DNA of 63,640 nucleotides from Setoptus koraiensis (GCA_048013815.1 CM106585.1:20584361-20648000), one strand, 5' to 3'; shown: positions 16,170 to 62,722, numbered from the stretch's first letter. Notes: generated by a model from the letters alone, not told the origin. Numbers and translations: made by a program.

Positions 16170-18253
16170 TAGGGAGAACAGAATCGGTGATTGAAAGCAG
16201 ACAAAATCGGCTTTTATCATTTAGAAAGGTGCCACTTTTCGGTTATTTCGGTTTTTAAAACCGATGTTGTTTCATTTATTGGATGGTTACGTTTTGTTTA
16301 TCATCTAGCAAGAAAGAATTGAAATTTATGATATAATGAAACTTAAGATTCTGTTCGGTAAATCTAGATCTATCAGCTTCGAATATCGCCTTTGTGCAAG
16401 AGAAAGATCTCTCGACATCGCATGATGTGATCGGCGCATATTTAAATTTAAGTCTAGTAGTGAGGTCCTCAATTTGGAGTAGCTCCAAATAATCAGGATT
16501 CTTTGTGATAGATTGTTCAACCTTGGCTTTAGGCTCTGGCAGCTTACATTGTTGGATTCTATCAAAAGTTTCGCCAACTAGCTTGACTGAATCATCAAGT
16601 CTCATATTTTTTGCCTCCAATTTGGTTATTGAATCAATCAAGAAGAAATAGTCAGACAGTTGAAACAATTCCTCCTTCAGTTTCTCGCTTTCGATCAACT
16701 CTTTGCATTCTTTGACACATAGAGCATCGCTATTAAATTCAGAGAGAAACATCTTTATAGCATCATAGTTATCCAAATGGTAGCTCGCAGTCTTCAACCA
16801 AGTGCACCATCACCATGATTGGTTTGGGAGGACAGGTGAGTTTAGTTCGATCCATGAATTCTCTCTGTCGTCTCTTGTTGCCTCTCAATATTTCTTTGAA
16901 TTTCCCAATGAATCTATCTACAGATGGATGGATATCACGTAATTTTTCAGCGACACGGTGCAGCATGTGAGCCACACAAGTGACATGATATGCGGCAGGT
17001 GTTACACTCTTCATGAGATCGACTGATTTTATCATGTAGGGTGCTTGGTCAGTGACAAACAACTTAACCCGATCATACGGGACATCATCTTGAGGCCAGA
17101 TAACTCTGCAACATTTAAGAAATAGTCGGTTCATCTCATAACTGTTGGCAGTTTCAACATAATCGATGTATATCAACATAGGTCTGACAGGTTTGCCATT
17201 GAGAGCACCCACAATGAAATTGACTTGAAAACGGTCCATTGAGTCAGTTGTTTCATCCATCATTACGAAGATATCTTGATCCCCGATGCTCTCTCTAATT
17301 TTTACTATCACTGATTGGTATAGATCTTCTATTGTGGTGCTTCTAAGTACAGATACAGAAGGTAATTTTTGTCCAGTTCTCTTCTCCAAAAAGGATTTAA
17401 ATAAGGGGTTCTTGAGCTTATGCAAAGGTATGTCTGCAGAAACAAGTGCAGTGCACAATTCCATTCGGAATTCTTTGTCATTCTTCTGCAAATAGCTTAC
17501 TTTATCCAAGCATATATCTATCCTCGGCTGGATCGAATTTGAATCCGAATTTTTCTTATGCAAATTAGATGTCAAATGCTCCTTGACTCTTGTTTTGAAG
17601 TGTTCTCGATCATATTTTACTTCGAAATTGCAGACAGTGCAGATCAACTTCGTGCCAAATGTGGTAAATTCTTTAAACTTTGAGCAGCATTCATCAAGAT
17701 GGTCTTTCAAACTCTTTTTAGGTCTCATGATACCGGAAAATGATTTATGATAAATTCTTACTGAGAAGGAGTTTCAATTCTTCACCAATTCAACTTGTGA
17801 GATCAACATGAGTTTCAATAGAATCAATGAATCAATTGTATGCGATATCGACATGTGATTGAGAGTCAATCATATGTCAATAACACGCGTAGCGTGCTAT
17901 TGTTATCCAACGGATTTTGTTACTCAACGGATTTTTTTATCCAACGGATTATATAACAGCGTTCAACCCGTTGAACACTGTGTTAATTGCACCCTGTGTG
18001 TAAGAAAGTACTAGTATACTGCAAACTCTGATCGCACAGTCACACCCACGCAGTCACAACGCAATTGAATTGCTCTCGCGGGAAAATAATCTATTTTCGG
18101 TTTTTACGGTTCTTACAACCTGATTTCGGTGTTTTCGGTTGATTCAAACAGGCCTTAAAAGATCCATCTAAGTCGGTCTGGCCCAAATACGAAGTCTTAG
18201 AGTTATGCCATCACCCGAAAAATTTCGGCTAATAACCGATTCTGTTCTCCCTA
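16170..18253 (-). mobile_element. hAT-superfamily DNA transposon, 2084 bp
   Basis: Perfect 19-bp TIRs TAGGGAGAACAGAATCGGT (16170-16188 and 18235-18253). Perfect 8-bp TSD GTCATCAG (16162-16169 and 18254-18261). Subterminal TTCGGTT and CAACGGATT repeats. Encodes a transposase. Confidence 0.93.
16276..17728 (-). pseudogene. Frameshifted small hAT/CGGBP1-like transposase
   Basis: N-terminal CxxC...HxxxxxH zinc finger, MDETTD, VTDQA, CVAH and C-terminal DVERSFS. The frame breaks at 16810, where the conserved RW motif reads GTG-A-TGG. Confidence 0.85.
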
Positions 18254-21323: not shown

Positions 21324-21983
21324 GATTTTTTCTTTCTTATGAATTAATTTTGATCAATAATGTTCTTTATTTTAATTAATAATTATAATAGTAATAATAG
21401 CTGTATAATAATCGAAGACAAAGAACAAATGAAGGAGAAACTAGGGTGTGGCCGAGGCTAAAAACGGAAGTGCAACAGTCCAGAGAAGCGAAAGGCATGC
21501 TGTTGCGCAAGAATGGCTTGGCGCAGTGCACAGAGAGAGAGAGAGAGAGAGAAAATAGTTGCGCAAGAAAAATAAATACCCGTGTGCGATGTGCTGTGCT
21601 ACATGCCTTCCACAGTGCTTACATATCAGTTCAGTTCAAACACCCTGTATCTTGATCTTATTTAGATTGAAGATTTAAATAGGCACCACAACATAGACAA
21701 CACTGACAACTAGTACAACAAAAGGCCAACATTTGTGCCAATAAAGTAAATTCAATTGACTAAAAGGCGATTAATAACAATAATACAAATTGGATTTTAG
21801 CATTCATACGAGACCTTACGGTCTCTTATGAATGACAATATAACAATAACAACATGTAATAACAATTAATAAATAAACAAACATCCTTCTTATTCCACAT
21901 CACCATTTAAATATCCTATTTAAATGGTGAAGTGGGATGAGAAGGAGCAGTTTAGTTTTAAACTCACAAATGAGACATTTCAG

Positions 21984-22595
21984 CACCAACACTAGCACCT
22001 ACGCCAGCAACTGCACCAGCACCTACACCAGCAACTGCACCAACACTAGCACTTACGCCAGCAACTGCACCAGCAGCTACACCAGCAACTGCACCAACAC
22101 CTACACCAGCAACTGCACCAGCAACTGCACCAGCAACTGCACCAACACTAGCACTTACGCCAGCAACTGCACCAGCAGCTACACCAGCAACTGCACCAAC
22201 ACCTACACCAGCAACTGCACCAACACCTACACCAGCAACTGCACCAACACCAGCAACCGGAGCACCAACACTAGCACCTGCACCAGCAACTGCACCAACA
22301 CCAGCAACCGGAGCACCAACACTAGCACCTGCACCAGCAACTGCACCAGCAACACCACCAATAACACCAGCAACTGCACCAACACCTACACCAGCAACTG
22401 CACCAACACCAGCAACCGGAGCACCAACACTAGCACCAGCAACTGCACCAACACCTACACCAGCAACTGCACCAACACCAGCAACCGGAGCACCAACACT
22501 AGCACCTGCACCAGCAACACCACCAATAACACCAGCAACACCACCAACACCAGCAACAACAATTGCAACAACAAAAAATGATAAATTGGAAAATG
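21984..22595 (+). CDS. Orphan Pro/Ala/Thr-rich mucin-like exon (phase 1-1, 612 nt)
   Basis: Tandem PATAPT repeats stay open between the acceptor TTTCAG (AG at 21982-21983) and the donor AATG|GTAAGT at 22596. Partner exons were not found. Confidence 0.55.
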
Positions 22596-22789
22596 GTAAG
22601 TTTGTTTTCTTTTGCGTGTACGTGTGCGTGTGCCTGTGTGTAATGATTTAAGCGCTTAAGATCGACAATAGTCCATCAAGCATCCACGGATGATGCTTAT
22701 GGTAGAAGATAAATTTCTGAATATATCAGGACTGATAATGAAAATTTTGGTTGATTGGTTGGTTGGTTGGTAATTCCTAGCGTAATTAA

Positions 22790-37600: not shown

Positions 37601-40600
37601 TATATCGTCTGGGTATGCCTTGATGTGTGTTGTCGAGCGTGGATATCGCATGCACACTGTGCATGTGTGCGCAATAAACGAAATATCCGCAGCGCATTAT
37701 GTAATGGTCAGCTGTTTTGCGTAACTGGCAATTTGTAGCTACAACAGCTGAACTGGAGCAGCAACAGCGGCAACAGCAACAACAGCGGCAACAGCAACAA
37801 CAGCAGCAACAACAACCGCGGCGCACCGGAGTCCGGCGAGTCGCTAGCGGCGCCTGGACGGGCCAAGACGAACGGCCGCTTGGCACGCAATAAAGTCATG
37901 TAATTGCGCGCCGTCTTTCTGTGTGTGCTGTATATTGTGCACACTGCACAGCGCCAAGATTGCGCGCCTTGATGTCCGCTGGCAAACAATTGGCCAACTT
38001 GATTACTCGTCGTTCGCACACGACACCCCTAAAACAGAACAAGTGAACAGATTATTATGACCAGCCGAGCGAGCCGATCAATAGACTGGCGATCAACTCG
38101 ACAACGGGCGCTAATGAGTCTGGGCCGTTTGTTTGCCCACAGCGCGCATTTGTTACCCGCTCGGCGCGCTCGTGCCCATTATCCCGTCGGGCCGATCGCC
38201 GCTGCCGGCCTGCTCGTCCGGCCCGCGCCCGTCTCGTCCGTCTCGTCTGGCCATCACCGAGTGCGGCCATCGCCGAGCGCGGCCAGCGTCGGGCCCAGCC
38301 GCGGGCCCGGCTGCTCGCGGCCGGCGGCGACCAGCGACATGCGTCGGCACAAGCCTAATTGAATTGTGCCCGAGCTCGAGCCCGCAGCGGCCCGCCACTG
38401 GCCACTGCGCATAATGCAGTTTGGCGCAGCGCCCAGCGAGCCGGCTGGCGGGCCGGCGGTAAGGTGAGCCGAGGCGCCGAATCACGATCGACCGGTCGGC
38501 CGGCATGACGCAAGGCATGTTGTGTTGTCACAAGGTTGGCGCGCCCGTGTTTGTGCACGGCGCTTGTTTGGCTGTTTAGAGGTTGCAAAGGGCAGCTTGT
38601 GGACAGTAACAACAATGCCAATTGTAACACGGCGCAGCAACGTAATTACAATGCAACAAATAGATTCGCCAGCGACGTCTGTGGCGAATCACACATAAGC
38701 CAGTTAGCGGCGTCGCGCCGTGATATCCGATGCCGTCCGCCGAAGCCGCTTCTCTCCGTTGCCAGCCTCCCCTGGCCAGTTCTGCGCTTCTTCGGCTTGC
38801 TTCTCGCTTCTGGATTCTTCGGTTCTCCGCTTCTCGGTTCTCCGCTTCTCGGTTCTCCGCTTCTCGGTTCTCGGTTCTTCGCTTCTCGATTCTCCGGTGG
38901 CGCGCATCTTGCAGTGAGCGTATGTAGTGAGCGGCAGCAGCAGTGGCACTAATATAAGTGATATGTAATAATAGGCGAGCACGACAGAAGCTCGCCTATT
39001 ATGAGTGCTACCTGCATGATTGGCCGCTGCGTGTTTAGCTGCGGCCGGCCGAGTGCACTTGTTATCATTGTTGCCACTGGCGGCCGCCATATAATTATTA
39101 TAACATTACCAGTGGCTAATATTGTGTGGCCAGGTAACATTGTGCGGCCAGGCAACATTGTGCGGCCAGGCAACATTATGTGGCCAAGGGCGTCGCGGAC
39201 AGCGAAACGAGAGCGCCAACAAGCCAACAGGAGCCGCGATTGTTGCGGCATTCGATGGGCCGGACAGAATGCGAGCACGGCGCGAACGCGCAGCCACATA
39301 ATGTTAGAGAGCACAGTCCGCCAGAACAGAGTTCGACAGAGCACAGTTCGACGGAGCAGAGTCCCAGCGAACAGAGTCCCGGCGAATGGGAATCCAATCC
39401 AGCAGCGGACAATGATGGCGCACAGCGCAACAGGCCAGTGAACAACAATGACGCCAAACAGTGCCGTGATGGTGTCCGGTGTGCACTTGTTGAGAAGCTT
39501 GCGTCGGGCCGGCACGAACTTGTTGCGGTCAGCACTTGTGTCCGGCGAGTCTCGTCTCTGGACGCGGCTTGTCGGCCGGCCGCTCAAGTTTAGTTGTGGG
39601 CCGGTCCGTAAGTCGGTCGGCGGGCCGGCGACGCTCGAGCTGGGCGCGTCCGGGCGCAATGTTGACCAATGGCGCTTGTCAGCTCAAACCGGCGCAAACC
39701 GAAACGGGCTAATAACACGGTCGCCAAATAACACAATCGCCAAACAAGGCACGACAGCGCTAATGATTGCACGGCCATCTCCGCCTGCGCCGGCCAGTGA
39801 GCAAACATTGATCGATGCCAGCGCCGAGCCCATCGATCTTGTTGCTGTTGACGCTGTTGTTGCCGTCGTTGTTGCCGTCGTTGTTGCTGTCGCTGTCGTT
39901 GCTGTTGTTGTTGAGGTCGGCGCTGTTGCGTCAGACGTGCGCGGTGTCACTGCGGCCGTCTATACATTCACCAGGCATTCATACTAAATAAATACGCCAT
40001 GAATATGGCGCAATGCATTGCGATATTTTATTTCGCACACTGGCCGTCGCAATGCCGCGGCGCATTATGCTGACGAACGAGCGCCGCTCAGGTGCCGGCG
40101 CGACGCAGTTGCAATTGGAGACGGATTCGATTTTAATGTTTGAATTGGATTTAATTTGCGGCCGTGATTGGCGGCCCGTGATCGGCGGCCGGCAGCGGGC
40201 CAATCGGCGGGCACTGCCTCGGCCAGTGGCCAGTGTCCAGTGGCGCGCGAAGCGATTTGCTCAAGTTTGCGCCGCTCAAGTTTGCGCCGCTCAGATTTGC
40301 GCCGCTAAAAGTGGCACCAATCGCAATTTTGTGCAATTGTGCAAATTTGTACCGACGCACCAATCAACTTGACGGCGCCGCAACAAATCAGTGGCGAACA
40401 CTGCGCACAGTTGCACAACTCGCGCTCAGATCGCGGCCCGTTTGCAAATGCATCAACAACTCGCCCATCGCTCGGTTGCTGCCCGCCGCTCGGATTGACT
40501 CGCCGCGATCGAGCGGCCACTGGCAACGCGCCACTGCCGCCAACACCGACAACCGATCGGGCGCTGCAGTCGGGCCAACAACAACAATTGATCAAAATAC

Positions 40601-44500: not shown

Positions 44501-47500
44501 GATGCCGTCGGCCACCGCCAATGGGGCCGCCAACAACAGCGCCAGCAATGATTTATGTGGCCCGAGCGTTTCGCCGGCCCGCCGCGTACAATATTGAATA
44601 TGCGACCAGCCAGTCGCGCAGTTATGAGCGCCAGCACCAATGCACCGGTTTGCTATTTGCACACTGTTCGCGTCATGGCACGCACGTCACGCGACAACGG
44701 AACAGGCGCTGCCTGCTACCTGCTGCCCGCTACCCTCTCTGCTGGACAGTGTAGGCAGTGTCTAGCCGCTCACCTGGCCGGCCGCGGCCGGACGCGCGGT
44801 TCAATTGGAGCTCTCTTCGGGCCGATCGGAGTCTTATCTGGCTCGCATCGCTCCTTGCGTTCGCTTGTGCGCCGTGTGTGCTATCAGCGCTAATTCATCG
44901 GCGGCACAATGGCACCAAAAACACGGCGGTGTCAGCGCCGCCGCCGCCGTGTCAGTGGGCCACAATGGCGTCGTCATTAGATTAATTATTATTTTTTAGC
45001 CACCATTTTTTGGCCGGCCATCCGTGTTTGTGGCAGTGGCCGGCCAGCGGTGCGACGCGAGCTGCATTCAATCAGGGCTGCCCGGCAGCAGCAACCACGG
45101 AACCACAAACAACGGCAACGCCAACTCATGTTAATTTGTGTGCGCCAAAGCGGCCGGACGCCGCCAGCTAGAGGGCAAAGAATCAGCGAGGGCAAAGAAT
45201 CAGCGAGGGCAAAGAATGAGAGAGGGCGAAGAAGCAGAGAGGGCCGAGAATTGGAGAGCGGACGGAATTGAGTTGGTTGGGGCAATTATTAGTTGACACT
45301 GACGCGCCGCGTCATGCGCTCAGCCAAATGGATTGTTAGCACGCGCTGACCAGCGCACGATGACTCACGCACCACTGCCGCTGACCAGTGGTTTTGTTTG
45401 TCGCCACGGCCAGTCAGCACGTTGTCTAGCCGTTGTCGTCGGCGTTGTTGGTGTTGTTGTTGTTGCCGCTGCTGCTGCTGTTGTGTCTTGGCTGCACTCT
45501 CGATATTGGCCCATCGTTGCCGCCAGACACGCCGCTGTGGCTGCTGCCGCGTTGTCATTATGACACACGTAACCAGCGAGCCCGGCGCGTTCAGACTGTG
45601 CAAATGTCAGCAAGGGCAGAGCCCCACCGAGTGAGAGTAATTTTAAAAGTCAACAAAATGCGCACATCCGATCAGCGCAACGCCATTACGACATTAGGAC
45701 GTTACGACATTACGACATGGGCCTATTATGTGTGTTATGATACCATTATGATATTGTCATGTTTTGGCGGTGCCTGGATATTATTATGAAACGATGATGA
45801 TATTACATGTGATATTGTGATGAGAGCTCGAGACCTGATTGACTCTCTATTGCCACGCATATTGTGTGTTGTTTATATATTTCATGTGCAGCAGCAGCAG
45901 CAGCTGATGGTGCACATGAAGCTGCATGAAGCTGGCTGCTGCCGCTGCACCAACAAACTGCTGCTGGCAAGTGGCCGCAAGCTCCTCCCCTTGATGCGTG
46001 CGCTGGCATGCGGCGCGGCCGAGGGGGTGGCAAGAGGAACAAAATTGATGGTCACTCTTTGCGCTCTGCTCTGTGGTTGTGGTGCAGGCCGCCACCACTG
46101 CACCGTAGCTCACAGCTACAAACAGAGCGAGCGGCACAGAGTCCGGTGTGGTGTGGAACAGTTCGGCCGGCGGCGCACCATCGCGCGATGTTATCAAGGT
46201 GCTGCCGCTGCTGCACCATGAGCAGTAGCAGGCGGAGTTGGTCGGTGCCGCGCACAAATTCGATCGTCGTCGTCGTCGGGAGCAGCCGCAGCGAGCAGTT
46301 GAGTTTGCTCGCGGGGTCATCCGCAAGCCCGTGATCTGATGCCAGGCATCATGCGTGTGTGTGTCGGGGGCTGGGTGGGGGAAGAAATATAGAACTATAG
46401 CAGGCTGATGCTGTTGCTGCAGTAGTGATAGCACGGTGGAGTATAGAATTGGTTGGTGGCATTCGCGTTTAGAATGTCGTCTCGTTCGCACTTTCCACTC
46501 GCCCAAACACAAACAGACGCACACATGCACGCACAGACGGGCACGTTGGCACAGTCGCACTCACACACAAGCGGCCGACAGTAGACAGACGGACGAGCGA
46601 ACGGACGGACGGACTGCGAGCAACGATTGAGAGAGGGAAAGAGACAGAAGAGAGAACAAAAACTAACACAACCATTCGACATTCGACGGTGAACGTGATC
46701 TCGTGCTGTCGCTCTGTTGTTGTTGTATCTCACAACAGTGCAGTATAGAACAAAAATCAAACAACAATTCGACAATTGTGAGCAGAAAATTCTACAATCG
46801 AACTACCAGCACCAGCACACACCATTTGATATTCTCATACACACACACACACACACACACACCACACACAAGAATCACGGCAGCAAATTCGGCCTGTTAG
46901 CGAATCAAGTTGTTCGGCCAATTGTTGCCAGAGCCTCAGAGGCAGCACGCTAATTGTTACCATTATTATTTCTATTTATTTCAAATTATCTCCATTTTGT
47001 TTATTTATCGACGATAGACAAATACAACAATAACGGCCAATCAAGCGATAATTCGCCAGGACAGACACCAACATTGAGAAGAAATCAAATCACAGTAACA
47101 GCCAGACAAACAGCACGCTCGAAAGCGAATAAAAAGTAAAAAATATGCCCACATCGGGGGCAGATTCGAGACGAATCGACAACAACGGCAAATGAGGAGG
47201 AGAACAGCAAGAAAAAATGCAGTTGCACATCTACTCCAGTCTCACGCAAACACTGCACACCAACAACAACAACAATTATCACAACTCCGCCGACACAAAA
47301 CAACGTTGCTGCCACCAAACCGAATCATCGTCAAATATCGTCGGCATCTAGGTGCCATTGTCGAAATTAGTAACAGCGCCGTAATCCAATATTAAACAGT
47401 GACAATTCAACAGCCATGACCTACAAAACCGTCACATGAGCACGAAAAGAAATTTAATAACGAGATATTCAATAATAAGAGATTCAACAATATTTAGAGA

Positions 47501-47769
47501 TTTAATCCCCAAGATAACACACACACACACACATTGTTTACAATCGTAATAACAACTAATAGCAACGTTGAGCGCCACCGTCTCACTGTTTCCTCGTGAG
47601 AGCACAACAAGTACAACACATCAATATATCAAAAATATAGATCGACCACAGCAGCAGCAGCATCATCATGGTCCTTGTGGTGGGCTGGTTCTCGCTAGTT
47701 ATTGAGGCCTTCATCCTCTTGAAATTGCTACCAACAGTAAATAGACGCCAATTTGTGTGCACTATCAAC

Positions 47770-50700
47770 ATGATGCTGTCTATGTCAACAATATTGATAT
47801 TATTATTATTATGTAATATACAACAACAACAAAATGATGTGATTGTTTTGGCTGCGCCAAGCTCAATTGGTAGCAATCAATTTGTGTTAAATCATTCCCC
47901 CAATAGTAATAATAATAACAGAAATTACAGACGTGAATCAATATTTATACCCGTTAATACGCCATCATTACAACAACAACAGCAAAATTTCCATCCATCA
48001 CAACTAATGCCCCAATCACTGCCACTATCGCCATCTATCAACAATTATCAAACAGAACAACAACAATTAATCAATCAACAACAGTATCAGCATCATCAGA
48101 TGCTCATGCTACCCTTAGCTGAATCATTAGTTGATCGTAGACTATTGGATTCAACTGAGCTTAATCCTCTAGTCTTACCATCGTGCCAACTGCCCCCCAC
48201 ATGGGCAGGTAAATGGTATCAGATGGGCACTAAAGATCCGATAAGATTTACAAATACAGAAATTAGTGAAAGAGGTGTTTGTCGTGATAGAAAAGATGAT
48301 AAGTTTCTATTTGAGCATCGTTCAACAAGATGTCTCGTCTGCATGGTGATCAATGAGCGACATATCAATGTGTTGCAATATAAAGAATCAGCCTCAGAGT
48401 GTCACATATCATCTTCTGCGTATGCCTCAATGCTTCAAGACGGCCACTCATCACATGAAATATTAGATAATCTTTGCTCATCAATAACCGGAGATGCCCA
48501 GCTAGAGTCCCTATTTAGACTTGAGACATCTCCTATAGAGTGCCCTATTATTGGTCAATACACATTCACCTATGATAATTGTAAAGTTATACCGTCCTCA
48601 TTAGAGTCGTGCATAGACAAAAAACAATTAAATTTCAAATTCAACGCCTGTCCGGATGTTGGCGGCTCCGAAAGCAAAAGTAGGTGTTACACAACAATAA
48701 TGAACACAACACAAATAAGATAGGGCCCAGTGCTAGAGAGGAAGAGAGAGAGAGAAAAAAACATGTAGAGATAGCTGAATGCTAAATGGTTTTTATCTTA
48801 AATATTACACACAATAACGCTGAGAAACGTTGATGGATGATAGTGGCTATTGTGTGCTTAATCAATCATGATTGATCTTGCCAATAATAGAGAAAAAGAT
48901 AGAGGAAACAATCATGTTCTTGTCTAATTTTTTGTTGTTTATCACACACATATACACTTCACACACCAACTAATATCTATTTGAACACTTTTTCATAACA
49001 ACCTTAACATATTTACCATAACTATCTTCCCTCGTCGTCTTATGTTGTATAAACTCGAATATAACTAGGTGAGGTACTTAAATGTTATGCCGATTGGACT
49101 GAAGGTAGCAACTATTATATGATTGGCAGATTGGAGCCAACAACAGCAAATAACAATGTAGACAGAGGAAAATTTCGTTGTTTTGTCTATGAGAAATTGC
49201 CCGATGGACAAACAATTTTGATGGCACAATCTTTAGAGGAAACTTGTTATGGATTGATAAGTGCAAGCGAGGGACCACGTACAATGAGAATTACTGCTAA
49301 GCCACCCACTTCTAGGTGTAATTTTCCTGATTATATAACAGGTCGACAAGCTTGGGTTAGTGTGGACAATTCGCTTATTTACATGTTCAACCAAAATTCA
49401 TCCAATTACCAAGTTAAAGAAACTAGAGAGGGAAATGTAATAGAGGAGGCCACATGTATTAAGCAAGTGTTTACGCCACAACAAACAGCGCGTAGGCAAC
49501 ACCAAATTGTAGACAATCAACAATTACAACAACAATATCACTCGTCATACCATTCGTCACACAGCGATACAAACTATGATCAATTCCTAGTCCAGGCAAC
49601 GAAGAACTGGTAAGTTTGAATTCACATTCCAAATGTGATTGCTTTTCTCCATCACTCACTCTCGCTTATTCGCCCCCCTCAATGGTATCTTATTCCATTT
49701 TGAATGTGCGTATTATTCAGATTAGACAGTCATTTAATGTGTGACCTAGAGAATTGCCCTCTCTTTCTAAACATTTAGCTAGAATTCTCTCCAATGATAA
49801 GTGCTATCAAGACCTATGGTTTTATTGCATGTATCGGCGAACAGTTTATTAGGTCAACAATTATCCGCTGATTGAAAGCATATTGTATAATAGAGTCAAA
49901 TTAATAATACTATAGAAGGACTCTGCTAGACGAGCAATTCCTTCTAATAGGGCTATGAATTTGACTTGGAAACAATGATCGCCGGCGTTTAGTTCTCTTA
50001 TTCTCCATCATCTAAATAACTTGAATAGTCAATCGCCAGAGATGGTCGCCTGTGTTAGACACACAACTATCCAGACACGCAAGCGTCATTACATATGCTG
50101 GTTGCATTATACGTAGGAAATGATCTATTTAATACTACGTTCTGTTCAAAATGCTAATTAGTTGGAAGAGTTTGACTCAGCTTTAGCAGCATCTTCTTGG
50201 CTATTCAATTGGCCCACGCAACAGATTTAACTGGCTTGTTGTAAGCTAGGCTACTTATGCTGTTGTTGTTATTGCAAATATGTTGTTGATATAGCTGACA
50301 ATCAGCATCTTAAATTAAAGTGGATAGGATCTTATTCGAGAATCATCATAGTTGGTGAGACTTAATTTATTTCCTAGACAATCACACAAACCTACAACCT
50401 GCCAGTTAGTTAATCATAGATAGATAGCCTGCTTTTCGACCACACTCCATAATCAATGACTTCCTTTTAACATCCTTTAAAGTTACTAGAGCAACTTTTT
50501 GCTACATGCCTCTGACTCGTGAATCTTGTCACCCAAACAAGAAACAAACTTATCAAACTGAGTGATACTACATTAAGAGAAAAGATCATTTTATTTTGTA
50601 TATTTAATGTCTATCTTAGAAGATGAATGATGCAACACCATTGATTTATAGGGGTGTTGGCGTGCTAAACAGAGTCAGTCTAGGCCAGCTAAATTGTTGA

Positions 50701-53700
50701 ATTATAATTGTGCGCGAGAGAGCATGATCATAACAGCAACATCATAAATATTATTAGGCTATTAAAGTCATTAGGATGTCGTCATTTTTGTGGCTTCTCT
50801 CGACTAACTAGTGTGGGCTTGACTTTTGGTATATAATAGCTTAGACCCTTATGATGTTGTCATGTTTAACATAAAGATTGCAGTTATATAATGTCTATTG
50901 TGAGGCATTAATCAAATCTAATTGAACACACTATTCTCCTACTGTGTTGTTCTTGTAGCTGTTTGTTAGCTTTTGATATTTTAATTAACTTCATTCAAGT
51001 TAATCAATCTTTTGTAAGTGTTTCACGTTTTATCTAACTATGTGTGATAATGTGTGGCATTGTAGGGCCACAATTTGACACACAATTTCCCGAACTGTTC
51101 AAGGAAGAGGACGATTTCCGACACTGGCAAGATACTTTACACGCTAACTACTCCATTAGCCACAATGATATTGAAGTTAGATGTAAAGCTGTTGTTGCTG
51201 TTGTCGCTACTTAGAGATAATGAGTCCTAATCTTGACTGTCTATTTGATCTATCGACCAAATGTTTATCGATTAACTAACCATTATTTATCTCATTATAT
51301 TCCCATTACTTAATCATCATGTTATTATCATCAACTGACAACAAAATTGCAACAACAACAAATCAACATTGAATAACTATGCTTCAAAACGAACATCTTC
51401 ATCAATTGTTTCCGTAAAATTGCCACTAATGTGACGCTGCAATCCGACACCAACAACTTAACAATAATTTCTACCAACTTTAACTCCAATAATGAATGCT
51501 ATTATTAACGATGAAACAACTACATCAACTCATTGATGTAATTTTCCTGTCGTTTTAAATGACTTATCGTGGCAATTCCACTTGAAAACCACTCATCAAC
51601 CTGTTTGTGCTTGTTTGTGTTTATGATTTGACATCGCTATGATAATGGTGTCTCTAATGAATCTCGACAAACAACAATTTATTACTATGGCTACTATCAA
51701 CTACTTGAAATTATTCACTAACATCAATGTTAACATCATCATCATTATTGTGATTATCATCATCATCTGTTGTTGTTCTAAAACTAAACAACACATAACT
51801 TGAATCCACTTACCTAATGACCACCATGACCATCGCATCATTGTCATGCATCCTACGTTGCGCCTTGACGATATATGAAAAAAAAATCCATTCTAATGAA
51901 TTCAATTTTTATCATCAAATTGATTCTTATTATACATTATCATGACGATGGTTCGCACACAAATGATTTACTCCCTTGTCATCAATGTGCATTCATCACG
52001 GCCACCGTCATCCTCTGCTTCTAATTCCAACACTGCCACCGATCGCAACTGAAAAAAAAACAAAATTAATAACGCTAATGTCTTCATCTACATAAAAAAC
52101 AACTATCTATTTCCATTTGCCCGCTTAACCTAAATATGATACACTCACACACATACAAACATGAAAAAACACAAAAAAACTAAAAAATGGCGTCTCTTCT
52201 GCTTGAAACTCGACAAACTGGTCGTCCTATACCATTTAAAAAATAATATGATTTCCCCTTGCCGCTATTATCAACATATGTGAACACTACACTTGGCTAA
52301 TGACATAATCTCATTGGAAACTCGATACCATCATCGCGTTAATCATATTTTCAACGCTTCGCCCATGTTGCGTCACCAACTCGAAACGAAATTGCTGTTG
52401 TTGTTAAAATCAAATTATCCACATGTGTGCTGCCTATTGTGCGCGTCACCCAACCGATGTTATTTATCATTGTCGGTCGGTCGCCCTAACCAAACCAACT
52501 TGATATTATTGTGTGCTGTCCGAACTTGATATAATCATCACTCATTGTATGTCTGTGTATGACGACGGCAACAACAACAACAACAGTCAAACATTGACAT
52601 ATTGTGTACGATTTCACAAGCGAGCAAACAGCTTGATTGAGATCGAGTTCTTTCAGCGTTCACATCACAATGACGAATCATGTAGTGACATCCATCCAGC
52701 AACATCACCCACACATATTATAACTCTTACAAGTAAGTACTTATGCTTATATATATTGATATAAATAATGATAATAGTAATAGTATATTGATAATAATAA
52801 CGGCAAAGGCGGTTATAATAGGAAATAAGCAGATTCTTTCTAAAGAGATGCATCTGTATTAGTAGGTAGTGTTAGTAGGAGGCACACAAAAGGGCGATAA
52901 TAATCTCTCTTTCTCTCTGGCTGACTCATCCAAAACGGTGCACCTACTTGAGAGGAAAGAAGCAACACAAGTAGTGTACACAAAGTGAGAGGAGGAGAGT
53001 TCATTAAATTATATACAGTATTTCGAACTGGTGGAGCGGCATTGCCTTCGCTTCACCAGTTCGATATAGCGGTGCTCTATATTTGACCGAAGCCAATATA
53101 AACTTTGCTGCTTGCTATCGGGCGACAGTGTTCGGTTTAAATCCAGTCTTCGAATTGCGCTACTTATCGTGTGTGGCAGATCATTTCTCACACATGACAC
53201 AACCGAATGTTGCCATGCCCAATCCACTCAGATATAATATAATAATGCCTCTCCGGTGTATGATATATGTGGCACACAAATATATCATAGAAATGATACA
53301 TTTGTTTGTGTGTATGATATTGAGATAGATTGAGCGCGAAAGAGAAAGAGAATAATGAAAGAAAAGTTCCGTTCCGATAATTTCGAATAGTTCTAAATTC
53401 GTTGCGCCGCTTTTGTCACATTGAGGCGAGTTTAGAAAATGAGCAATAAGACATTTCATATCTCATCTCTCTCACTCTGATTGGGCCGCTATTATGCTCT
53501 GTGCTGGTGGAGGCATATGTTGGTGCCGTTATATGTTGTTTTGGCAGAGTGAGAGAGGGAGAGAAAGCGCCACCCATGACAATGACTAGTTTAATTGTCA
53601 ATTAAACAAACCATGAATCTTGCCTCTGCTCCTCCGCCATAGTGGCACTGTTACGCCTGTCAAACAATATTGTTCTGTCTCTCTACAAGCAACGGCTAGA

Positions 53701-56700
53701 CGATGGTAGCGATCAACAGCGAAAACGGCACAAAACAAAAACAATAAGACGACGATAAGAATTCAATCATGCCCTGAGGATCCTCAAATTTTATCTACAC
53801 ACAATCTGTTTGGCTTTGAGACGAACACATCGAGACAATAATAAGAATAGTATGTAGTTAGTTGCTTGTTAGTATTCTTTGGCACAAACTAACACTCGCA
53901 TTGCAAAGATCCATCTTTGTGTGTCCTATATAGCGTAAGCGTATGCATACACTTGTCTCGTTGGACATGGGTATGCCTCGGGCTGTTATTATTATTATGT
54001 TTGTGCCATGTCTAGAGTCATCATCTAGTCTAAATTATAGCCATAGTGTGTTTGTGTTGGGATAAGATTGGATGATGAGCATCAGTGCAAGTCCAACAGT
54101 AAAAGAATTGTTGGGCATGGCCGAAAATTGCAAAGCGAGAGCCGGATCGTGGTTGTTGCTGTTGTTCATTGTTTATACTGTCATTTATGCACTCATACTG
54201 ACCACAGGCCAGCGAGTGGCGTACCGACTGGCATCTATCATGGAGCTTATGGTCAGAGTCAGTTACTGGTGATTGTCTATATTACGACCAACGGAACATG
54301 AGCGAGCATGCCTTATAATGACGGCGACCACGACGGACACAACAACTTGTCTACTCCTTTAGCCCTCATTTTCGCCAGCATCATTGTGATGAATAGTGGC
54401 AGCGAGTCAGCGATGGGATTGGATTAATTTCAATTTAGCAAAGTGAAAAGAACAGAGCAGAATAGAAAGCGAGCCTTCGTTTGATTTTCGAAACGCTGCC
54501 GCGGACACACTGATTCATGGCAACAACCAGCACCTGATGTTTGGGCTGTGCATGTGTAAATGGACGACTCTAATTGAAATTATTATGATTCATTTGGCGA
54601 TGCTGATGACTGCAAACAAACAAACAAACAGATCGGGATTTTCACTGATCATTATTTTGCCGCCGCCGCCTCGCTTAATCTGGCCAGCGCTGGTGCTGGT
54701 GCCGGTGCTGCTGCATTCAGTCACTTTTCCTTGTGGCGTTTATAAGCTCTCTTTCATTTATGATGTCGGCTTGTCGTTTTCAAAATTATAATAAGCGACT
54801 ATATTCTTTTATGGCCAGCAAATAGATAGAGAGGAGCAGACAAGAGATCAGATTTCCCGTGAGAGAGAGAGAGCCTTTTATTCTGCCAGACTAATCGATC
54901 ATATAGCGGATAACTAGGCACCATCGCCACAGGTTTACTCGACGACAGTATTTATATGTTATTTGTAGCCGCGGGACGAGTCCGCTATATCGGTGCCGTC
55001 GTCGTCGTCGCAGTACTTGCTGTTGTTGATGTTTTCGCTGGCTGGTAAGGGCGAGTGCGTCTCTGAATTTGAATTTCTGCCTCAAATCTCAGAGTTGACC
55101 ATCCGGCGTTGGAATTCTTCTCTTCGGCAGGCGAACACAGACACACAATGATAGTTGACAGTTGCTTTCAATTATCACTTAACACCACCCAACATCGATG
55201 GTGTGTGACAAGCTCAAATTTGATTTAAGCGATTTTGCTTGTTGCTGGTGCTAGTGTGCGAATTTGCGAATTTGCATATATTTAAATTGTATTTACTCAA
55301 ATGGCTAGTTGAGGCGATATACGACAGAGCGAGAGAACATGATTTTGCTGCAATGCGAAATCAAGGTGTGTCTGTCAGCGATAGAACGCGAGATATCTAC
55401 ATATTTATATATAACGTTATAGCGGTATCTACAGTATGGTGTATTTATATATAGAGAGATAGGGAGACATTCCTGCAATTTATGAAATTGTTTCAACACC
55501 ACCACCACCACCACCAGTGAATGTGCCAACAATTTCGGGTGGACCCGAGCAAGCAGCCACCTACGTCGCCGTCACCGGTGCACCAGTCAGCACCGGTGGT
55601 GCCACACGATGTCAGATAGCATCTCATAATAATATGAAGAATGGGCTGTGTATGGGGCTTTAGGATCGAGCCAATTCGACAGGCAGCTAATCTGGCCATT
55701 GCAATATATCTAATCTTGCATCTTTGTCCGTGGCCGGCTGTTGTAATACAGCTATGCCTCTAAGTGGATGCCTCAAGAATATAAATAGCAGCGACTTGTT
55801 TCTTTCATCATACTCCTTTCTACTAATATAAATTAGATGAGATTATCTGCTGCTCTATGTCAAACGTGTATGTGTGGCTCGGTATTGGTCACGGTTTGAT
55901 TGAGCCGCGCTATCAAACTAGTCGACGACGACGACGACGACGACGGCCGTCTAATTCAAATATTGCAAAAGCCAGCCAAACCGAGAGAAGAAGAGGACAG
56001 TAATTTTTGCGTTCACCACTCCTATTTATATCTGGCTGCCGCCGCTCGGTGCCTGATCAATCATGTTCAATGATGCATCAAAGGCATCATCGCGGCCGTC
56101 GTCATCGCACATTTTGTTTTTGGCTTCTTCGAGCTGTTCGGCCAAGCAAGCGACCAAGTTGCTGCTTCCACTGACGACCACGACCGTCCAAAAGTGATTA
56201 AATTTACTTTTTTCATTGCGAGCCCCCGCCTGACCAACAGACCAGAGGCGGTTACTGAACCTGATAACTTGTCGGTAGGACCGATATCTATCGTGGCTGC
56301 TGCAGTCAGCAGTATATGTGGCAGTATATTATGGCAACAGCGCCATTGCCAACATTGAAGGGGGACATTGTCGCAAATTGTAGCAAATTTTGTGAGTGTC
56401 GCTAGTGCTGACGCGCCCGACATTATCTACTGCTGATACATATATGCATTTAATTGGTCAATTTAATGGTGATCATCAGTGCCACTTAGCTTTAGTGGCC
56501 GGCAATGATCTAACTCGTAAATATTTAATTGCTTTATTTTGTCCTCACTCGGTGTGTCTCAATTTAAGATCACGGCCACAGCATCTTCGTCCGCGAGCAA
56601 AATCTCTTGGACAATAAAAATGATAATTATCTGATTTGCCTAAGCTCTCTCTCTCTCCGGCTATCTGAGTCCATGAGTTTGTTGCTGTGCCTGGGCTGGC

Positions 56701-57815
56701 TGCTGGCCTTCTAAGTGGCCATCAAATGATTTGATTCAGATCAAACCATTAGAAGCAGCCTTATTTATATATCTTATTTAATTATCGACGCGTCCCTTAT
56801 CGCTGCCACTGCTGCCTATCATGCTATCATCGAATCTCAAAATCGTTCCTGGTGACTAATCAAACGTTGATTACGATTCTTGCTATTATTATCATTGTTC
56901 ACTCATTCTTAGGTGCCGAACAACAACCCTGCCCATTTGATGGAATATACAGTATAGAGGCGCCAATGGAAAGTGATCTATCATACAATCCGTCTGATTT
57001 GTTTGTCTGTCCGAGGCAATCATTTTTGGCGGCTCACTGTGATGATGCTAGTCTCATACACATACATTCCAAATGTAACATCAAAACGACCATTAAAAGT
57101 AAGTTAATTAATAATCCTCTCATCGGACTATCACTGTCATGATGATGATGATACCACTACTCAACTCAGGTAATAAAAAACTAAACTCTCTCGCTATTGC
57201 TTTACTTCCATATTATTATTTATTATGTTAATTGCCTTTATAGATTTATATTGTTTGGGCAGCTTCTACTGGCCGTCGCATGGATCGTTGGTGTTGTTGC
57301 TGTCGGACGACGATCGCCAAAGGTACCAGGCAATTATTCAACAACGTGATAATCAACAATTACAACAAGCTTACAACCACCACCACCATCACCACAACAA
57401 CATTCAAGCCCCCTCTAGTGATACTGCAATGCTACCTCCGCAACAACATATGAGATTCTTTAACAACGACTTGAATCAACGGCCCTCCATTATATCATCA
57501 TCGGCAGTTATAAACATGTCCATATCATCAATAACAAGCCCATATTTCAAGATTCCGCCTAGGAATGCCATGAGGGTCAAATTGATTCGCAAAAGTCAAT
57601 GCGTTGAGGTGTCTAGATCACAGATTGCCAGCAGTAGCAGTAGTAGTAGTAGCTCGTCTTCAGCGCCCTCCTCGGCACCAGCATCCTCTGCCGCCAACAA
57701 CCACAGGCAAACAAACTCTGTTAATTTGTTAATTACAATTATATCGTTATATCATTGTTTAAAATTTTTCTACTTTTGTAATAACAATATGAGAAGATTG
57801 GGTATTTTCGTTTAA
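47770..57815 (+). CDS. Cys-rich secreted or surface protein with a two-fold internal repeat, ~784 aa (recalled as resembling the arthropod DUF7042/7043/7044 family). Exons 47770-48679, 49069-49609, 52587-52732, 56913-57098, 57244-57815
   Basis: Signal-peptide-like start and hydrophobic C-terminus. Paired motifs: CQLPPTWAGKW / CNFPDYITGRQAW; CMVINERHINVLQ / CVRFHKRANSLIE; CPIIGQY / CPFDGIY; LKCYADW / LYCLGSF. All four GT-AG introns are phase-compatible (1,2,1,1) and the total of 2355 nt is divisible by 3. The family name is from memory and needs an HMM search. Confidence 0.8.
51225..52586 (+). other. AG-exclusion zone of 1,360 nt ending at the exon 3 acceptor
   Basis: The last upstream AG is at 51223-51224 and the next AG is at 52585-52586. 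Checked line by line, including block boundaries. Confidence 0.9.
53019..53068. ncRNA. Intronic ~19-bp hairpin, candidate pre-miRNA
   Basis: TAT-T-TCGAACTGGTG-G-AGCG pairs with CGCT-T-CACCAGTTCGA-T-ATA, with one G.U pair, one mismatch and a 10-nt loop. Confidence 0.25.
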
Positions 57816-60337: not shown

Positions 60338-62722
60338 ATGTCTCTCATAGCCAGATTTGGTAGCCTTGGCAAGATCAATTGTAAGCGCACCCTGCCTCTA
60401 TCATTGAGACTGTTGTCATATAATCAAGCCAACAGAATATTGTACGGCCTACATGGACGAACAACACCAAAACAGGATAATGTATATCTATTAAATTCTA
60501 TCATTCTCGATGGATCAAATGCACTCAAGGATGCATTCAGGAAGCTACATTTTCACGAAAATATAACCTCTGCGCCTAGATTAACGGAGTTGCGAACATT
60601 GCTCACTCGCTTGCTGGATCTCTGCTCTAAAACTAATCAAACAAACGATACTACTAAGAACAACAAACAAGATTCTGACAATGCTAAAAAATCCAATCCC
60701 AAACCATCAGAAGAATCCGCTGATGCATTTAAGCAGGCCCTGGGGAGAATCATGAAAGAATACGATTCCATAAAGGAATCTATGGAACAACAGCAACAAC
60801 AGCAAGGCGGACCCTCCGGAGGCAAAAACAAAGATGGCAACGACAATAGCACAAGAAATCTTGCCATACAAACATTTCTGGCCGTCAATCTGGCTATACT
60901 TGTCTATCAGCTTTACGATATGGGTAACTATCAGGAGATCACCATGAAAGACTTTTTGAACTATGTGAAGCTGGGTAAAGTGGCCAAAGTTGAAGTCGTC
61001 AACAAAAAGTGGGTCAAAGTATTTGAGCATGCAGGCGAGAACAGAAAGATAATGTGGTTCAATATAGGCAGTGTTGACTCGTTCGAGAGGAGTTTATACA
61101 TTACTCAACATGAGTCCCAAATAGAACCTCAGAATCATATACCCGTATTCTATAGGAGCAAAGTGGAATACCTTGCTCTCATTTTCAATATGTTACCAAC
61201 TATACTCATATTTGGCGCTATCTACTACTTTATGCGACGAGCCGGAGGTATTGTCGGCGGCAAGGGTCGCAAGGGCGGCCTTTTCGGTATGTCTTCATCA
61301 CCTGCAAAAATCGTCAATCCGGCCGATATTGGTGTCACATTTAAAGATGTTGCCGGCTGCGAGGAGGCCAAAATGGAAATAATGGAGTTCGTGAATTTTC
61401 TAAAAAACCCACAAAAATACACCGATCTCGGAGCCAAAATACCAAAAGGTGCATTATTGACTGGGCCTCCGGGCACCGGTAAGACACTGTTGGCCAAGGC
61501 TACTGCCGGAGAGGCAAGTGTACCGTTTATCAGTGTGTCAGGTTCAGAGTTTCTAGAAATGTTCGTTGGTGTTGGTCCATCCAGGATACGTGATATGTTT
61601 GCTATCGCCCGCAAACAGTCTCCCTCGATATTATTTATTGATGAAATAGATGCCGTTGGTAGAAAGAGGAGTAACAGGAGTTTCGGACCAGCCGAGGCGG
61701 AAAACACTCTCAATCAGCTTCTAGTCGAAATGGATGGTTTCAACACAACTACAAATGTTGTCGTTATGGCTGCTACCAACAGGGCTGATATTTTAGATCA
61801 AGCTCTGCTTAGGCCGGGTCGATTTGATCGTCAGATATACGTTCCCGCGCCAGACATAAAAGGAAGATCTGAAATATTTCAAGTTCATTTGAAACCCATC
61901 AAAACAACACTGACTCTGCCAGAATTATCTCGTAAAATGGCTGCCCTAACTCCAGGTTTCACTGGAGCTGATATTGCCAATGTTTGCAATGAAGCCGCCC
62001 TTATAGCTGCTCGGGATAACGGCGAAACTGTTATTTTAAAACATTTTGAACAAGCCATTGAAAGAGTGATAGCCGGTATGGAGAAAAAGACCAATGTTAT
62101 GCAACCGGATGAGAAAAAGACGGTGGCCTACCACGAGGCCGGACATGCAGTGGCGGGATGGTTCCTAGAGCATGCCGATCCCCTATTAAAAGTATCTATA
62201 ATACCTCGCGGCAAAGGTCTAGGTTATGCACAATACTTGCCAAAGGAACAGTTCCTATATACAAAGGAGCAATTATTAGATCGTATGTGTATGACGTTAG
62301 GTGGCAGGGCCTCAGAGCAAATCTTTTTCAATAAAATAACCACCGGCGCCCAGGATGATTTGCAGAAGATAACTCAGATCGCCTACTCACAAGTGGTACA
62401 ATTTGGAATGAGCGAAAAAGTTGGTAATCTATCGTTTGATCTCCAGAAGGCCGGCGAACCGATGTTTGAGAAGCCATATAGTGAGACAACAGCGCAATTA
62501 ATCGATTCTGAAGTTAAAATATTGGTTGACTCAGCATACAAGAGGGTAATAGAGTTGCTAACTAAGAACAAAAGTCAAGTAGAAAGAGTGGCAAAGCGTT
62601 TATTGGAAAAAGAGAGTCTAAACAGAGAGGATATGATTGAGTTATTAGGCCAGAGGCCGTTCAAAGAGAAGTCAACTTATGAGGAATTTGTTGCTGGAAC
62701 TAGTGCCGAAGAGAAACTCTAA
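60338..62722 (+). CDS. AFG3L2: Mitochondrial m-AAA protease, 794 aa, coding sequence intronless
   Basis: [11 protein letters not shown], Walker A GPPGTGKT, Walker [20 protein letters not shown] and the zinc motif [17 protein letters not shown]-domain and two hydrophobic segments. Confidence 0.95.

What the first reader, a model, noticed from the sequence alone, without database searches (positions are those of the whole stretch)
51225..52586. Giant AG-exclusion zone: 1,360 nt with no AG, ending exactly at a splice acceptor
Sequence: there is no AG on the + strand from 51225 to 52584, although A and G are both present and GA, TG and CG are common. At a rough expected AG rate of 4-5% per position, about 60 would be expected. 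The first AG (52585-52586) is the one that restores the frame (KN-C-QTLTYCVRFHKR) and yields the missing repeat segment. The upstream half of the same intron has normal AG content. Established: the spliceosome generally picks the first AG after the branch point, and distant-branch-point exons have AG-free zones, typically up to a few hundred nt. Inference: the branch point lies about 1.3 kb upstream (candidates CCTAAT near 51226 and AACTAAC at 51274-51280, followed by a T/C-rich tract) and step 2 scans or loops over more than 1 kb. That would be an extreme, possibly lineage-specific mode of 3' splice-site selection.
Basis: partly seen in the sequence, partly recalled or inferred. Interest (0 to 1): 0.95.

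Follow-up and report, generated by a model that had tools for sequence, protein, structure and literature searches.

The report
Kilobase AG-free zone before mite exon
In a gall-mite-lineage gene, the last 1,360 bases of an intron hold no AG at all, selection keeps it that way in a sister species, and RNA shows the first AG is the splice site; this suggests the intron's branch point lies about 1.3 kb upstream, far beyond the roughly 400 bases mapped so far.

Summary
There is no AG on the + strand from 51225 to 52584, where about 53 are expected. The next-longest AG gap in the window is 202, and the complementary CT is normal.

The RNA contig from run X5 joins 49609 to 52587 (GT..AG, 2,977-nt intron). 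Two DNA runs carry the stretch unchanged, so it is not an assembly artefact.

The organism is an eriophyoid mite, not a fly. The gene encodes a DUF7044/7042/7043 protein.

A sister species (L001) has a 1,434-nt AG-free zone at the same acceptor. The two zones differ by 201 substitutions and 21 indels, the same divergence as the AG-rich upstream half of the intron. None of these changes made an AG, although 13-18 would be expected. That shows selection specifically against AG.

Seven more distant mites have only 45-103 AG-free nt at this acceptor. Each of these zones contains a CTAAC motif (ACTAAC in five of the seven). In the window, AACTAAC plus a pyrimidine run lies at the 5' edge of the zone (-1307), and the acceptor itself is (CAA)n-AG.

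Best reading: an extreme AG exclusion zone with a distant branch point and first-AG selection. The branch is not mapped.

This scan has noted shorter AG-free zones (112-957 nt) elsewhere in this genome. I found no published description.

The parts
49069..49609 (+). Exon 2 of the DUF7044/7042/7043 gene, followed by the donor GTAAGT at 49610-49615.
   Evidence: It matches Pfam DUF7042. X5 RNA contigs cover 49156-49608 with 0 mismatches and join it to exon 3.
49610..51224 (+). Upstream half of intron 2, with normal AG density (95 AG in 1,615 nt). It ends with the last AG at 51223-51224.
   Evidence: It is 85.1% identical to L001, with 58 species-specific AGs.
51226..51231 (+). Candidate branch-point motif CCTAAT, one base after the last AG (branch A at 51230, 1,356 nt from the acceptor G).
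   Evidence: It is conserved in L001. In related mites the AG-free zones also start 2-9 nt before a CTAAT/CTAAC motif.
51274..51280 (+). Best candidate branch point, AACTAAC (branch A at 51279, 1,307 nt from the acceptor G).
   Evidence: It lies in a 50-nt block that is 48/50 identical to L001. A CTAAC followed by a pyrimidine run lies inside the AG-free zone of this same acceptor in 7 other mite species, and in 5 of them it is ACTAAC.
51281..51335 (+). Pyrimidine-rich run next to the candidate branch point (70% C/T in the first 40 nt, the highest after any CTAAY motif in the zone).
51225..52584 (+). AG exclusion zone: 1,360 nt with no AG, G-poor (11.6%), not a repeat array, and no excess predicted RNA structure.
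   Evidence: L001 has 1,434 AG-free nt at the homologous place. The two differ by 201 substitutions and 21 indels without creating an AG, where 13-18 are expected.
52485..52490 (+). Proximal branch-point-like motif CCTAAC, 97 nt from the acceptor G. It is the rival or additional branch site.
   Evidence: It is conserved in L001 and has no strong pyrimidine run after it.
52569..52586 (+). Acceptor: a (CAA)n run in place of a polypyrimidine tract, then the acceptor AG at 52585-52586.
   Evidence: Related mites also have A/C-rich sequence before their acceptor AGs.
52587..52733 (+). Exon 3 (147 nt, in frame), encoding the end of a DUF7043-like segment. The donor GTAAGT follows at 52734.
   Evidence: X5 record 27 covers 52586-52734 and continues into downstream exons. 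Pfam gives a weak DUF7043 hit. The peptide is 100% identical in L001.
48905..49066 (+). AG-free zone of 162 nt before the exon 2 acceptor (AG at 49067-49068). CTAAT plus a T-rich run lies near its start.
   Evidence: The intron 1 junction itself rests on homology and is not seen in RNA.
56759..56910 (+). AG-free zone of 152 nt before the next downstream homologous exon (acceptor AG at 56911-56912).
   Evidence: The exon is placed by homology only.

Best explanation
This is an extreme AG exclusion zone. During splicing of intron 2 (49610-52586), the branch point and its pyrimidine tract are recognised at the 5' edge of the zone. The most likely site is AACTAAC at 51274-51280, possibly with CCTAAT at 51226-51231. 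The second catalytic step then uses the first AG downstream, which lies about 1.3 kb away and is preceded by (CAA)n rather than a pyrimidine tract. Any AG arising between branch and acceptor would capture splicing and break the reading frame, so selection removes every such mutation while the rest of the sequence drifts. Shown here: the AG-free state, the spliced junction, conservation of the AG-free state with neutral-like divergence, and the same motif/zone layout at shorter scale in related mites. Inferred: the branch position, and that AG choice works by a first-AG (scanning-like) rule over this distance. The zone probably grew by AG-free insertions and slippage in the spacer between pyrimidine tract and AG, from an ancestral 45-103 nt.
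For: There is no AG in 1,360 nt against 53-80 expected. The absence is strand-specific, and AG density switches abruptly from normal to zero at 51224. The zone ends exactly at the acceptor used in RNA (X5 record 27, GT..AG, 149 nt of exon 3 and onward). Sister species L001 has 1,434 AG-free nt at the same acceptor. Its zone is 84.6% identical to the window's, against 85.1% for the upstream half-intron. None of the 201 substitutions and 21 indel events creates an AG, whereas shuffling the positions of the same substitutions gives 13-18 AGs and never zero in 5,000 trials. The control half-intron has 58 species-specific AGs. AACTAAC plus the most pyrimidine-rich run of the zone lies 50 nt inside the 5' edge and is conserved. 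In 7 other mite species this acceptor has 45-103 AG-free nt, each containing a CTAAC motif (ACTAAC in 5 of the 7). At the exon 2 acceptor, in 8 of 9 species, the AG-free zone (48-220 nt) begins 2-9 nt before an (A/G)CTAAT. So in this clade the zone runs from branch motif to acceptor whatever its length. All three acceptors of the window's gene have at least 152 AG-free nt. The model itself is established for vertebrate distant-branch-point exons (PMC1431707).
Against: No lariat or branch was mapped, and only assembled contigs could be laid. A conserved CCTAAC lies 97 nt from the acceptor and could serve as a conventional, if distant, branch. CTAAY motifs are spread through the zone (11 against 4.8 expected), so several branch sites may be in use. 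Only two species carry the long zone, so conservation of single motifs is not statistically informative. Mapped branch-to-acceptor distances elsewhere reach only about 400 nt (PMC1431707). Distal branches in human often contribute little to productive splicing (PMC5378181).
Confidence: 0.68

Rival explanations
1. Many branch sites are used. Most splicing uses a proximal branch (for example CCTAAC at -97), and the ACTAAY-like motifs scattered through the zone, up to its 5' edge, are used occasionally. Every AG downstream of any used branch would give mis-spliced mRNA, so selection in a large population clears AG from the whole stretch without a dominant 1.3-kb branch-to-acceptor step.
For: CTAAY motifs are enriched in the zone (11 observed against 4.8 expected, P about 0.007), and 7 are conserved in L001, including the proximal one. 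Human introns often use several branch points, and distal ones contribute modestly (PMC5378181).
Against: The proximal motif has no good pyrimidine run after it. The orthologous acceptor in 7 other mites has its CTAAC plus pyrimidine run at the 5' part of the AG-free zone, matching the distal site here. This rival still requires that branches about 1.3 kb upstream are used often enough to be seen by selection.
Confidence: 0.22
2. The AG-free state has nothing to do with 3' splice-site choice. It would be a by-product of composition, a repeat or mobile element that lacks AG, a strand-biased mutation process, or a binding platform for some RNA or DNA factor.
For: Gooding et al. describe a human 369-nt AG-free zone caused by a repeat with a conventional branch at -17 (PMC1431707). 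The zone is G-poor and contains short CAA, CAT and A-rich microsatellites.
Against: A and G are both present (454 and 158), and GA, TG, CG and CT are at normal levels. TRF finds only short arrays, and there is no second copy in the window or in related loci. The upstream half of the same transcribed intron has normal AG. The zone ends exactly at the used acceptor. Substitutions and indels accumulate at the neutral-like rate but never create an AG in either species. There is no Rfam match and no excess RNA structure.
Confidence: 0.05
3. The tract or the junction is an assembly or annotation artefact.
For: None was found.
Against: Contigs from two DNA runs span 48000-53900 with 0 to 1 base differences, none in the zone. 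An RNA contig carries the exon 2-exon 3 junction. An independent assembly of a sister species has the same layout.
Confidence: 0.01

Closest known systems
Vertebrate distant-branch-point exons with AG exclusion zones: alpha-tropomyosin exon 3, PTB exon 11 (AGEZ 381, branch -351), GABBR1 exon 23 (AGEZ 288, branch -275), Fugu PTB exon 11 (AGEZ 590, predicted). Source: Gooding et al. 2006, PMC1431707.
   Same: An AG-free stretch runs from a branch-point motif plus adjacent pyrimidine tract to the acceptor. AG frequency is normal upstream. The first AG downstream is used. The AG-free state is conserved in an ortholog although the sequence diverges.
   Different: The zone here is 3 to 4 times longer than any mapped case (up to about 400 nt) and more than twice the Fugu prediction. 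It is in an arthropod with an intron-poor genome. The acceptor is preceded by (CAA)n. No branch mapping or mutagenesis exists, and alternative use of the exon is unknown.
Human PTPRS intron with an AGEZ of 1,126 nt (Gooding et al. 2006, PMC1431707).
   Same: A kilobase-scale AG-free tract lies before an acceptor, with several candidate distant branch points.
   Different: The human zone shrinks to 229 nt in mouse, and its nearest candidate branch is at -171, so selection over the full length is not shown. Here the full length is kept AG-free in two species across 201 substitutions and 21 indels.
Budding-yeast style 3' splice-site choice: a strong UACUAAC branch site, first AG downstream, and long branch-to-AG spacers shortened by RNA structure (COF1; PMC3239191). 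Also the strong 3' intron consensus of intron-poor eukaryotes (Irimia and Roy 2008, PMC2483917).
   Same: The lineage is intron-poor. A near-consensus ACUAAC/ACUAAU lies at the start of the AG-free zones. The acceptor AG needs no adjacent pyrimidine tract.
   Different: Intron-poor lineages converge on constrained, short branch-to-AG distances. Here the distances range from 45 to 1,434 nt. No conserved or unusually stable structure bridges the spacer (z about 0).
Other long AG-free zones noted by this scan in the same genome (112-957 nt; notes s1-318736, s1-318739, s1-325877).
   Same: The same genome, the same layout, and the same proposed mechanism.
   Different: This one is the longest so far. 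It has an RNA-verified junction and a quantitative test of selection against AG. The other notes were not re-checked here.

Membership tests
AG exclusion zone / distant-branch-point 3' splice site (Smith 1989, 1993; Gooding 2006) | An extended AG-free region immediately upstream of an acceptor that is really used. | tested here: met
   There are 1,360 AG-free nt, and the acceptor at 52585-6 is used in the RNA contig.
AG exclusion zone / distant-branch-point 3' splice site (Smith 1989, 1993; Gooding 2006) | AG frequency returns to normal upstream of the zone. | tested here: met
   There are 95 AG in 1,615 nt at 49610-51224 (observed/expected 1.12), with three AGs in the last 12 nt before the zone.
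AG exclusion zone / distant-branch-point 3' splice site (Smith 1989, 1993; Gooding 2006) | [quoted passage not shown] | tested here: met
   CCTAAT begins at +2 and AACTAAC at +50 from the zone start, followed by a 70% pyrimidine run. Both are conserved in L001. This holds at the sequence level only.
AG exclusion zone / distant-branch-point 3' splice site (Smith 1989, 1993; Gooding 2006) | The branch is experimentally located at the distal site (lariat mapping or branch-site mutation). | not testable with these tools
   Only assembled contigs were available in the single read-laying run, and no lariat-type joint was seen.
AG exclusion zone / distant-branch-point 3' splice site (Smith 1989, 1993; Gooding 2006) | The AG-free state is conserved in orthologs beyond what sequence conservation explains. 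| tested here: met
   L001 has 1,434 AG-free nt at 84.6% identity, and 13-18 new AGs were expected against 0 found. More distant mites have 45-103 nt.
AG exclusion zone / distant-branch-point 3' splice site (Smith 1989, 1993; Gooding 2006) | An AG introduced into the zone captures splicing. | not testable with these tools
   This needs a minigene or in vitro splicing.
Repeat- or composition-caused AG-free tract (a non-splicing AGEZ, as in Gooding's repeat example) | The tract is a repetitive or low-complexity element that lacks A or G, with a good conventional branch and pyrimidine tract near the acceptor, and is not conserved in the ortholog. | tested here: not met
   Only short microsatellites are present. 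A is 33% and G 12%. No other copy exists. The acceptor has no proximal pyrimidine tract. The tract is conserved in L001.
Intron-poor-eukaryote 3' intron architecture (Irimia and Roy 2008) | A strong branch-point consensus. | tested here: inconclusive
   A CTAAC/CTAAT-type motif is present in 19 of the 20 AG-free zones examined at two acceptors across 11 species, mostly as ACTAAC or ACTAAT. That sample is too small and too biased for a genome-wide consensus.
Intron-poor-eukaryote 3' intron architecture (Irimia and Roy 2008) | A constrained, short distance from branch point to acceptor. | tested here: not met
   AG-free lengths are 44-220 nt at the exon 2 acceptor and 45-1,434 nt at the exon 3 acceptor.

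The most novel reading that the evidence does not exclude
Eriophyoid mites, after losing most introns, may have uncoupled the branch point and pyrimidine module from the acceptor AG altogether. The spliceosome would commit at an ACUAAY plus pyrimidine module and then find the first AG in a directional, effectively distance-independent way, here over 1.3 kb. If so, this intron would be the longest natural branch-to-acceptor spacer known. [quoted passage not shown]
Probability: 0.4. Interest if true: 0.9.

Novelty: new variant of a known kind. Interest (0 to 1): 0.74.

Why it matters
How the spliceosome picks the acceptor AG after branching, by threading along the RNA or by diffusion, is still debated, and natural test cases reach only a few hundred bases. 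Here selection has removed every AG from 1.36-1.43 kb in two species, which implies that an AG anywhere in that span would be used. That is what a first-AG rule operating over kilobases predicts. The mite lineage also offers a graded natural series at the same two acceptors (44-220 nt and 45-1,434 nt). It links an unusual 3' splice-site layout, with the pyrimidine tract at the branch and A/C-rich sequence at the AG, to extreme intron loss. On the practical side, gene predictors that look for a branch and pyrimidine tract within 40-100 nt of the acceptor will mis-annotate such genomes.

Tried and rejected
1. Drosophila origin was my first guess, from the CAA repeats. It was rejected: the intronless AFG3L2 ORF at 60338-62722 is closest to Fragariocoptes setiger (85%) and Aceria tosichella (84%), ahead of ticks (80%).

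2. RNA structure bringing branch and acceptor together. The MFE z-score is about 0 in both species, and the exterior-loop distance is no shorter than in shuffles.

3. A tandem repeat or mobile element. TRF finds only short arrays, and blastn finds no other copy.

4. A relic pseudo-exon. The direct repeat at 51350-51372 resembles the acceptor and exon 3 start, but the match is only the CAA run plus 8 nt, and the exon-only alignment scores below shuffles.

5. A remnant of the fatty-acyl-CoA reductase gene that sits in this intron in all nine other mites sampled. tblastn finds none in the window or in L001.

6. A hosted small RNA. There is no Rfam match at 47000-57500.

7. Coding potential. ORFs in the zone are at most 78 aa with no family hit, and the ORF at 51044-51214 just upstream is broken by indels in L001.

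8. A window-wide test of whether long AG gaps start at CTAAY. The result is only weak (5 of 26 for gaps of at least 150 nt, against a 3% background), and it counts the window and L001 as non-independent entries.

9. More relatives from metagenome contigs. The scan found only the species of L002 again.

10. Backward joints (52585 to 51343) occur in the DNA runs too. They are CAA-repeat cross-matches, not lariats.

Full report
**Observation**

On the + strand the last AG before the tract is at 51223-51224 and the next is at 52585-52586, so 51225-52584 (1,360 nt) holds no AG. The zone contains A 454, T 431, C 317 and G 158. Its own composition predicts 52.7 AGs, and the AG rate of the upstream half of the same intron (95 in 1,615 nt) predicts about 80. 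GA, TG, CG and the reverse-complement dinucleotide CT (89) are all present at ordinary levels, so the absence concerns one dinucleotide on one strand.

The next-longest AG gap in the 63.6-kb window is 202 nt. The only other long dinucleotide-free runs, at 21.9-22.6 kb, lie in a tandem Thr/Ser/Asn/Cys-rich coding repeat. The AG-free zone is not a repeat array: TRF finds only short CAA, CAT and A-rich microsatellites. It has no second copy in the window or in related loci.

**Gene and junction**

The flanking ORFs encode a DUF7044/DUF7042/DUF7043 protein (Pfam).

The single read-laying run showed that run X5 holds RNA-type contigs covering only the exons, with no mismatches. Its record 27 (1,765 nt) joins 49609 to 52587, a GT..AG skip of 2,977 nt. 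It covers all 147 nt of exon 3 and then continues beyond the 52734 donor.

Runs X1 and X2 hold DNA contigs spanning 48000-53900 with no difference inside the zone. The tract and the junction are therefore real.

The acceptor AG is preceded by (CAA)n and not by a pyrimidine tract.

**Organism**

I first took the sequence for a fly. The intronless AFG3L2 ORF at 60338-62722 has its best named matches in the eriophyoid mites Fragariocoptes setiger (85%) and Aceria tosichella (84%), ahead of ticks and other arthropods (80% or less).

Earlier notes of this scan had said the same. Published eriophyoid genome papers report that more than 80% of genes are intronless. They say nothing about branch points, pyrimidine tracts or AG-free zones (PMC7738191; PMC11879100).

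**Selection against AG**

A Logan contig from a sister species (L001) is 82.5% identical in DNA over 6.2 kb, and its exon 3 peptide is identical. It has a 1,434-nt AG-free run ending at the same acceptor.

In a global alignment the zone is 84.6% identical with 12% gap columns. The AG-rich upstream half of the intron is 85.1% identical with 8% gap columns. The zone as a whole therefore drifts like ordinary intron.

The 201 substitutions and 21 indel events in the zone, including insertions of 17-29 nt, created no AG in either species. Placing the same substitutions at random positions gives 13 AGs on average. Using the control region's substitution spectrum gives 18, and taking L001 as the source gives 17. 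None of the 5,000 trials in each of the three simulations gave zero. The control half-intron has 58 species-specific AGs.

This is direct evidence for purifying selection aimed at the AG dinucleotide itself across the whole 1.4 kb.

**Where the zone starts, and what relatives show**

Both species share the same last AG. It is followed at +2 by CCTAAT and at +50 by AACTAAC (51274-51280). The AACTAAC lies in a block that is 48/50 identical between the species, and it is followed by the most pyrimidine-rich run after any CTAAY motif in the zone.

I fetched the orthologous locus from nine further mite species (L002, L006-L009, L013-L016).

| Acceptor | Other mites | L001 | Window |
|---|---|---|---|
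| Exon 3: AG-free nt | 45, 48, 57, 76, 89, 89, 103 (7 species) | 1,434 | 1,360 |
| Exon 2: AG-free nt | 44-220 (9 species) | 154 | 162 |

- **Exon 3 acceptor.** Each of the seven zones contains a CTAAC motif (ACTAAC in five), usually followed by a pyrimidine run and then an A/C-rich spacer before the AG.
- **Exon 2 acceptor.** In 8 of 9 species an (A/G)CTAAT begins 2-9 nt after the last AG, even though the distance to the acceptor varies five-fold.
- **Window gene.** All three acceptors I could place have at least 152 AG-free nt: 162, 1,360 and 152.

In this clade the AG-free zone therefore runs from a branch-type motif to the acceptor whatever its length. The pyrimidine tract sits next to the branch motif and not next to the AG, and the spacer length is free to change. 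The window's exon 3 acceptor is the extreme end of that series. It is derived, because all other sampled species have about 100 nt or less.

All nine other species also carry a fatty-acyl-CoA reductase gene on the opposite strand inside this intron. The window and L001 have no trace of it.

**Mechanism**

The pattern is what the AG exclusion zone and distant-branch-point model predicts. The branch site and pyrimidine tract are recognised independently of the AG. The second step uses the first AG downstream, so AGs between branch and acceptor are selected against while AGs upstream are free (Gooding et al. 2006, PMC1431707).

On that model the 5' edge of the zone marks the most upstream branch that is used often enough for selection to notice. 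My best estimate is the AACTAAC at -1307, because a CTAAC plus pyrimidine run occurs at this same acceptor in the other mites, and CCTAAT at -1356 is the alternative.

The branch position is inferred, not shown. A conserved CCTAAC at -97 could serve as a proximal branch. CTAAY motifs are moderately enriched through the zone (11 against 4.8 expected, P about 0.007). A mixed regime with several branch sites is therefore the main rival.

Predicted RNA structure does not bridge the spacer (z about 0). There is no Rfam family, no coding signal and no pseudo-exon to explain the tract otherwise.

The zone most likely grew by AG-free insertions and slippage in the spacer. It carries several microsatellites and differs by 21 indels between the two sister species.

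**Comparison with what is known**

- Mapped distant branch points lie 100-400 nt from the acceptor.
- Predicted cases include Fugu PTB exon 11 (AGEZ 590).
- A human PTPRS intron has 1,126 AG-free nt, but only 229 in mouse and with the nearest candidate branch at -171 (PMC1431707).
- Distal branches in human often contribute modestly to productive splicing (PMC5378181).
- Intron-poor eukaryotes tend toward strong branch consensus and short, fixed branch-to-AG distances (PMC2483917). The mites fit the first trend but not the second.

Literature searches for AG exclusion zones in Drosophila, mites or eriophyoids found no description of this. Other windows of this same genome were already noted by this scan to have AG-free zones of 112-957 nt. 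I did not re-check those notes. Within my window, three of three acceptors agree with them.

**Verdict**

It is a new, extreme variant of a known kind of 3' splice-site layout, in a lineage where the layout seems to be the rule. The claim that step 2 reaches over 1.3 kb is likely, but it still needs branch mapping.

Noticed in passing
L002 12399-14117; L006 4616-6302; L007 6176-7887; L008 5757-7514; L009 12367-14119; L013 3323-5001; L014 5817-7600; L015 4436-6259; L016 3463-5189: In all nine other mite species sampled, a fatty-acyl-CoA reductase gene (NAD_binding_4 + Sterile) lies on the opposite strand inside the intron between exons 2 and 3. The window and its sister L001 have no trace of it in this intron, and the window has none anywhere in its 63.6 kb.
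   Followed up: partly
window 48905-49066 and 56759-56910: The other two acceptors of the same gene also have long AG-free zones (162 and 152 nt). The first is kept at 154 nt in L001.
   Followed up: partly
L002 11301-11350; L006 3118-3339; L007 5003-5116; L008 4663-4728; L009 11261-11331; L014, L015, L016 exon 2 acceptors: At the exon 2 acceptor of related mites, the AG-free zone (48-220 nt) starts 2-9 nt before an (A/G)CTAAT that is followed directly by a pyrimidine run. The acceptor AG is preceded by A/C-rich sequence such as aaaacaaaacAG or gcaacaacAG.
   Followed up: yes
window 51426, 51654, 51814, 51893, 52075, 52297: Six of the eight CTAAT motifs in the zone are followed by G (CTAATG, four of them CTAATGA), although only about 24% of T's in the zone are followed by G. 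The meaning is unknown.
   Followed up: no
window 60338-62722: There is an intronless 794-aa AFG3L2 (m-AAA protease) ORF. Its best named relatives are eriophyoid mites, which identifies the genome's lineage.
   Followed up: yes
window 21937-22600: A tandem-repeat ORF encodes a Thr/Ser/Asn/Cys-rich low-complexity protein (TSNCTNTSTYASNC...). It accounts for the long GT-, TC-, AT- and TT-free runs in the window.
   Followed up: partly
window 39116-39486: A 368-nt CT-free run on the + strand (AG-free on the - strand) begins with three copies of a ggccaggyaacattgtg repeat. No splice-site link was examined.
   Followed up: no
window 16769-17728 and 18923-19774 (- strand): ORFs here have DUF659 and DDE_3 transposase-type domains, which suggests mobile-element remnants in an otherwise streamlined genome.
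   Followed up: no
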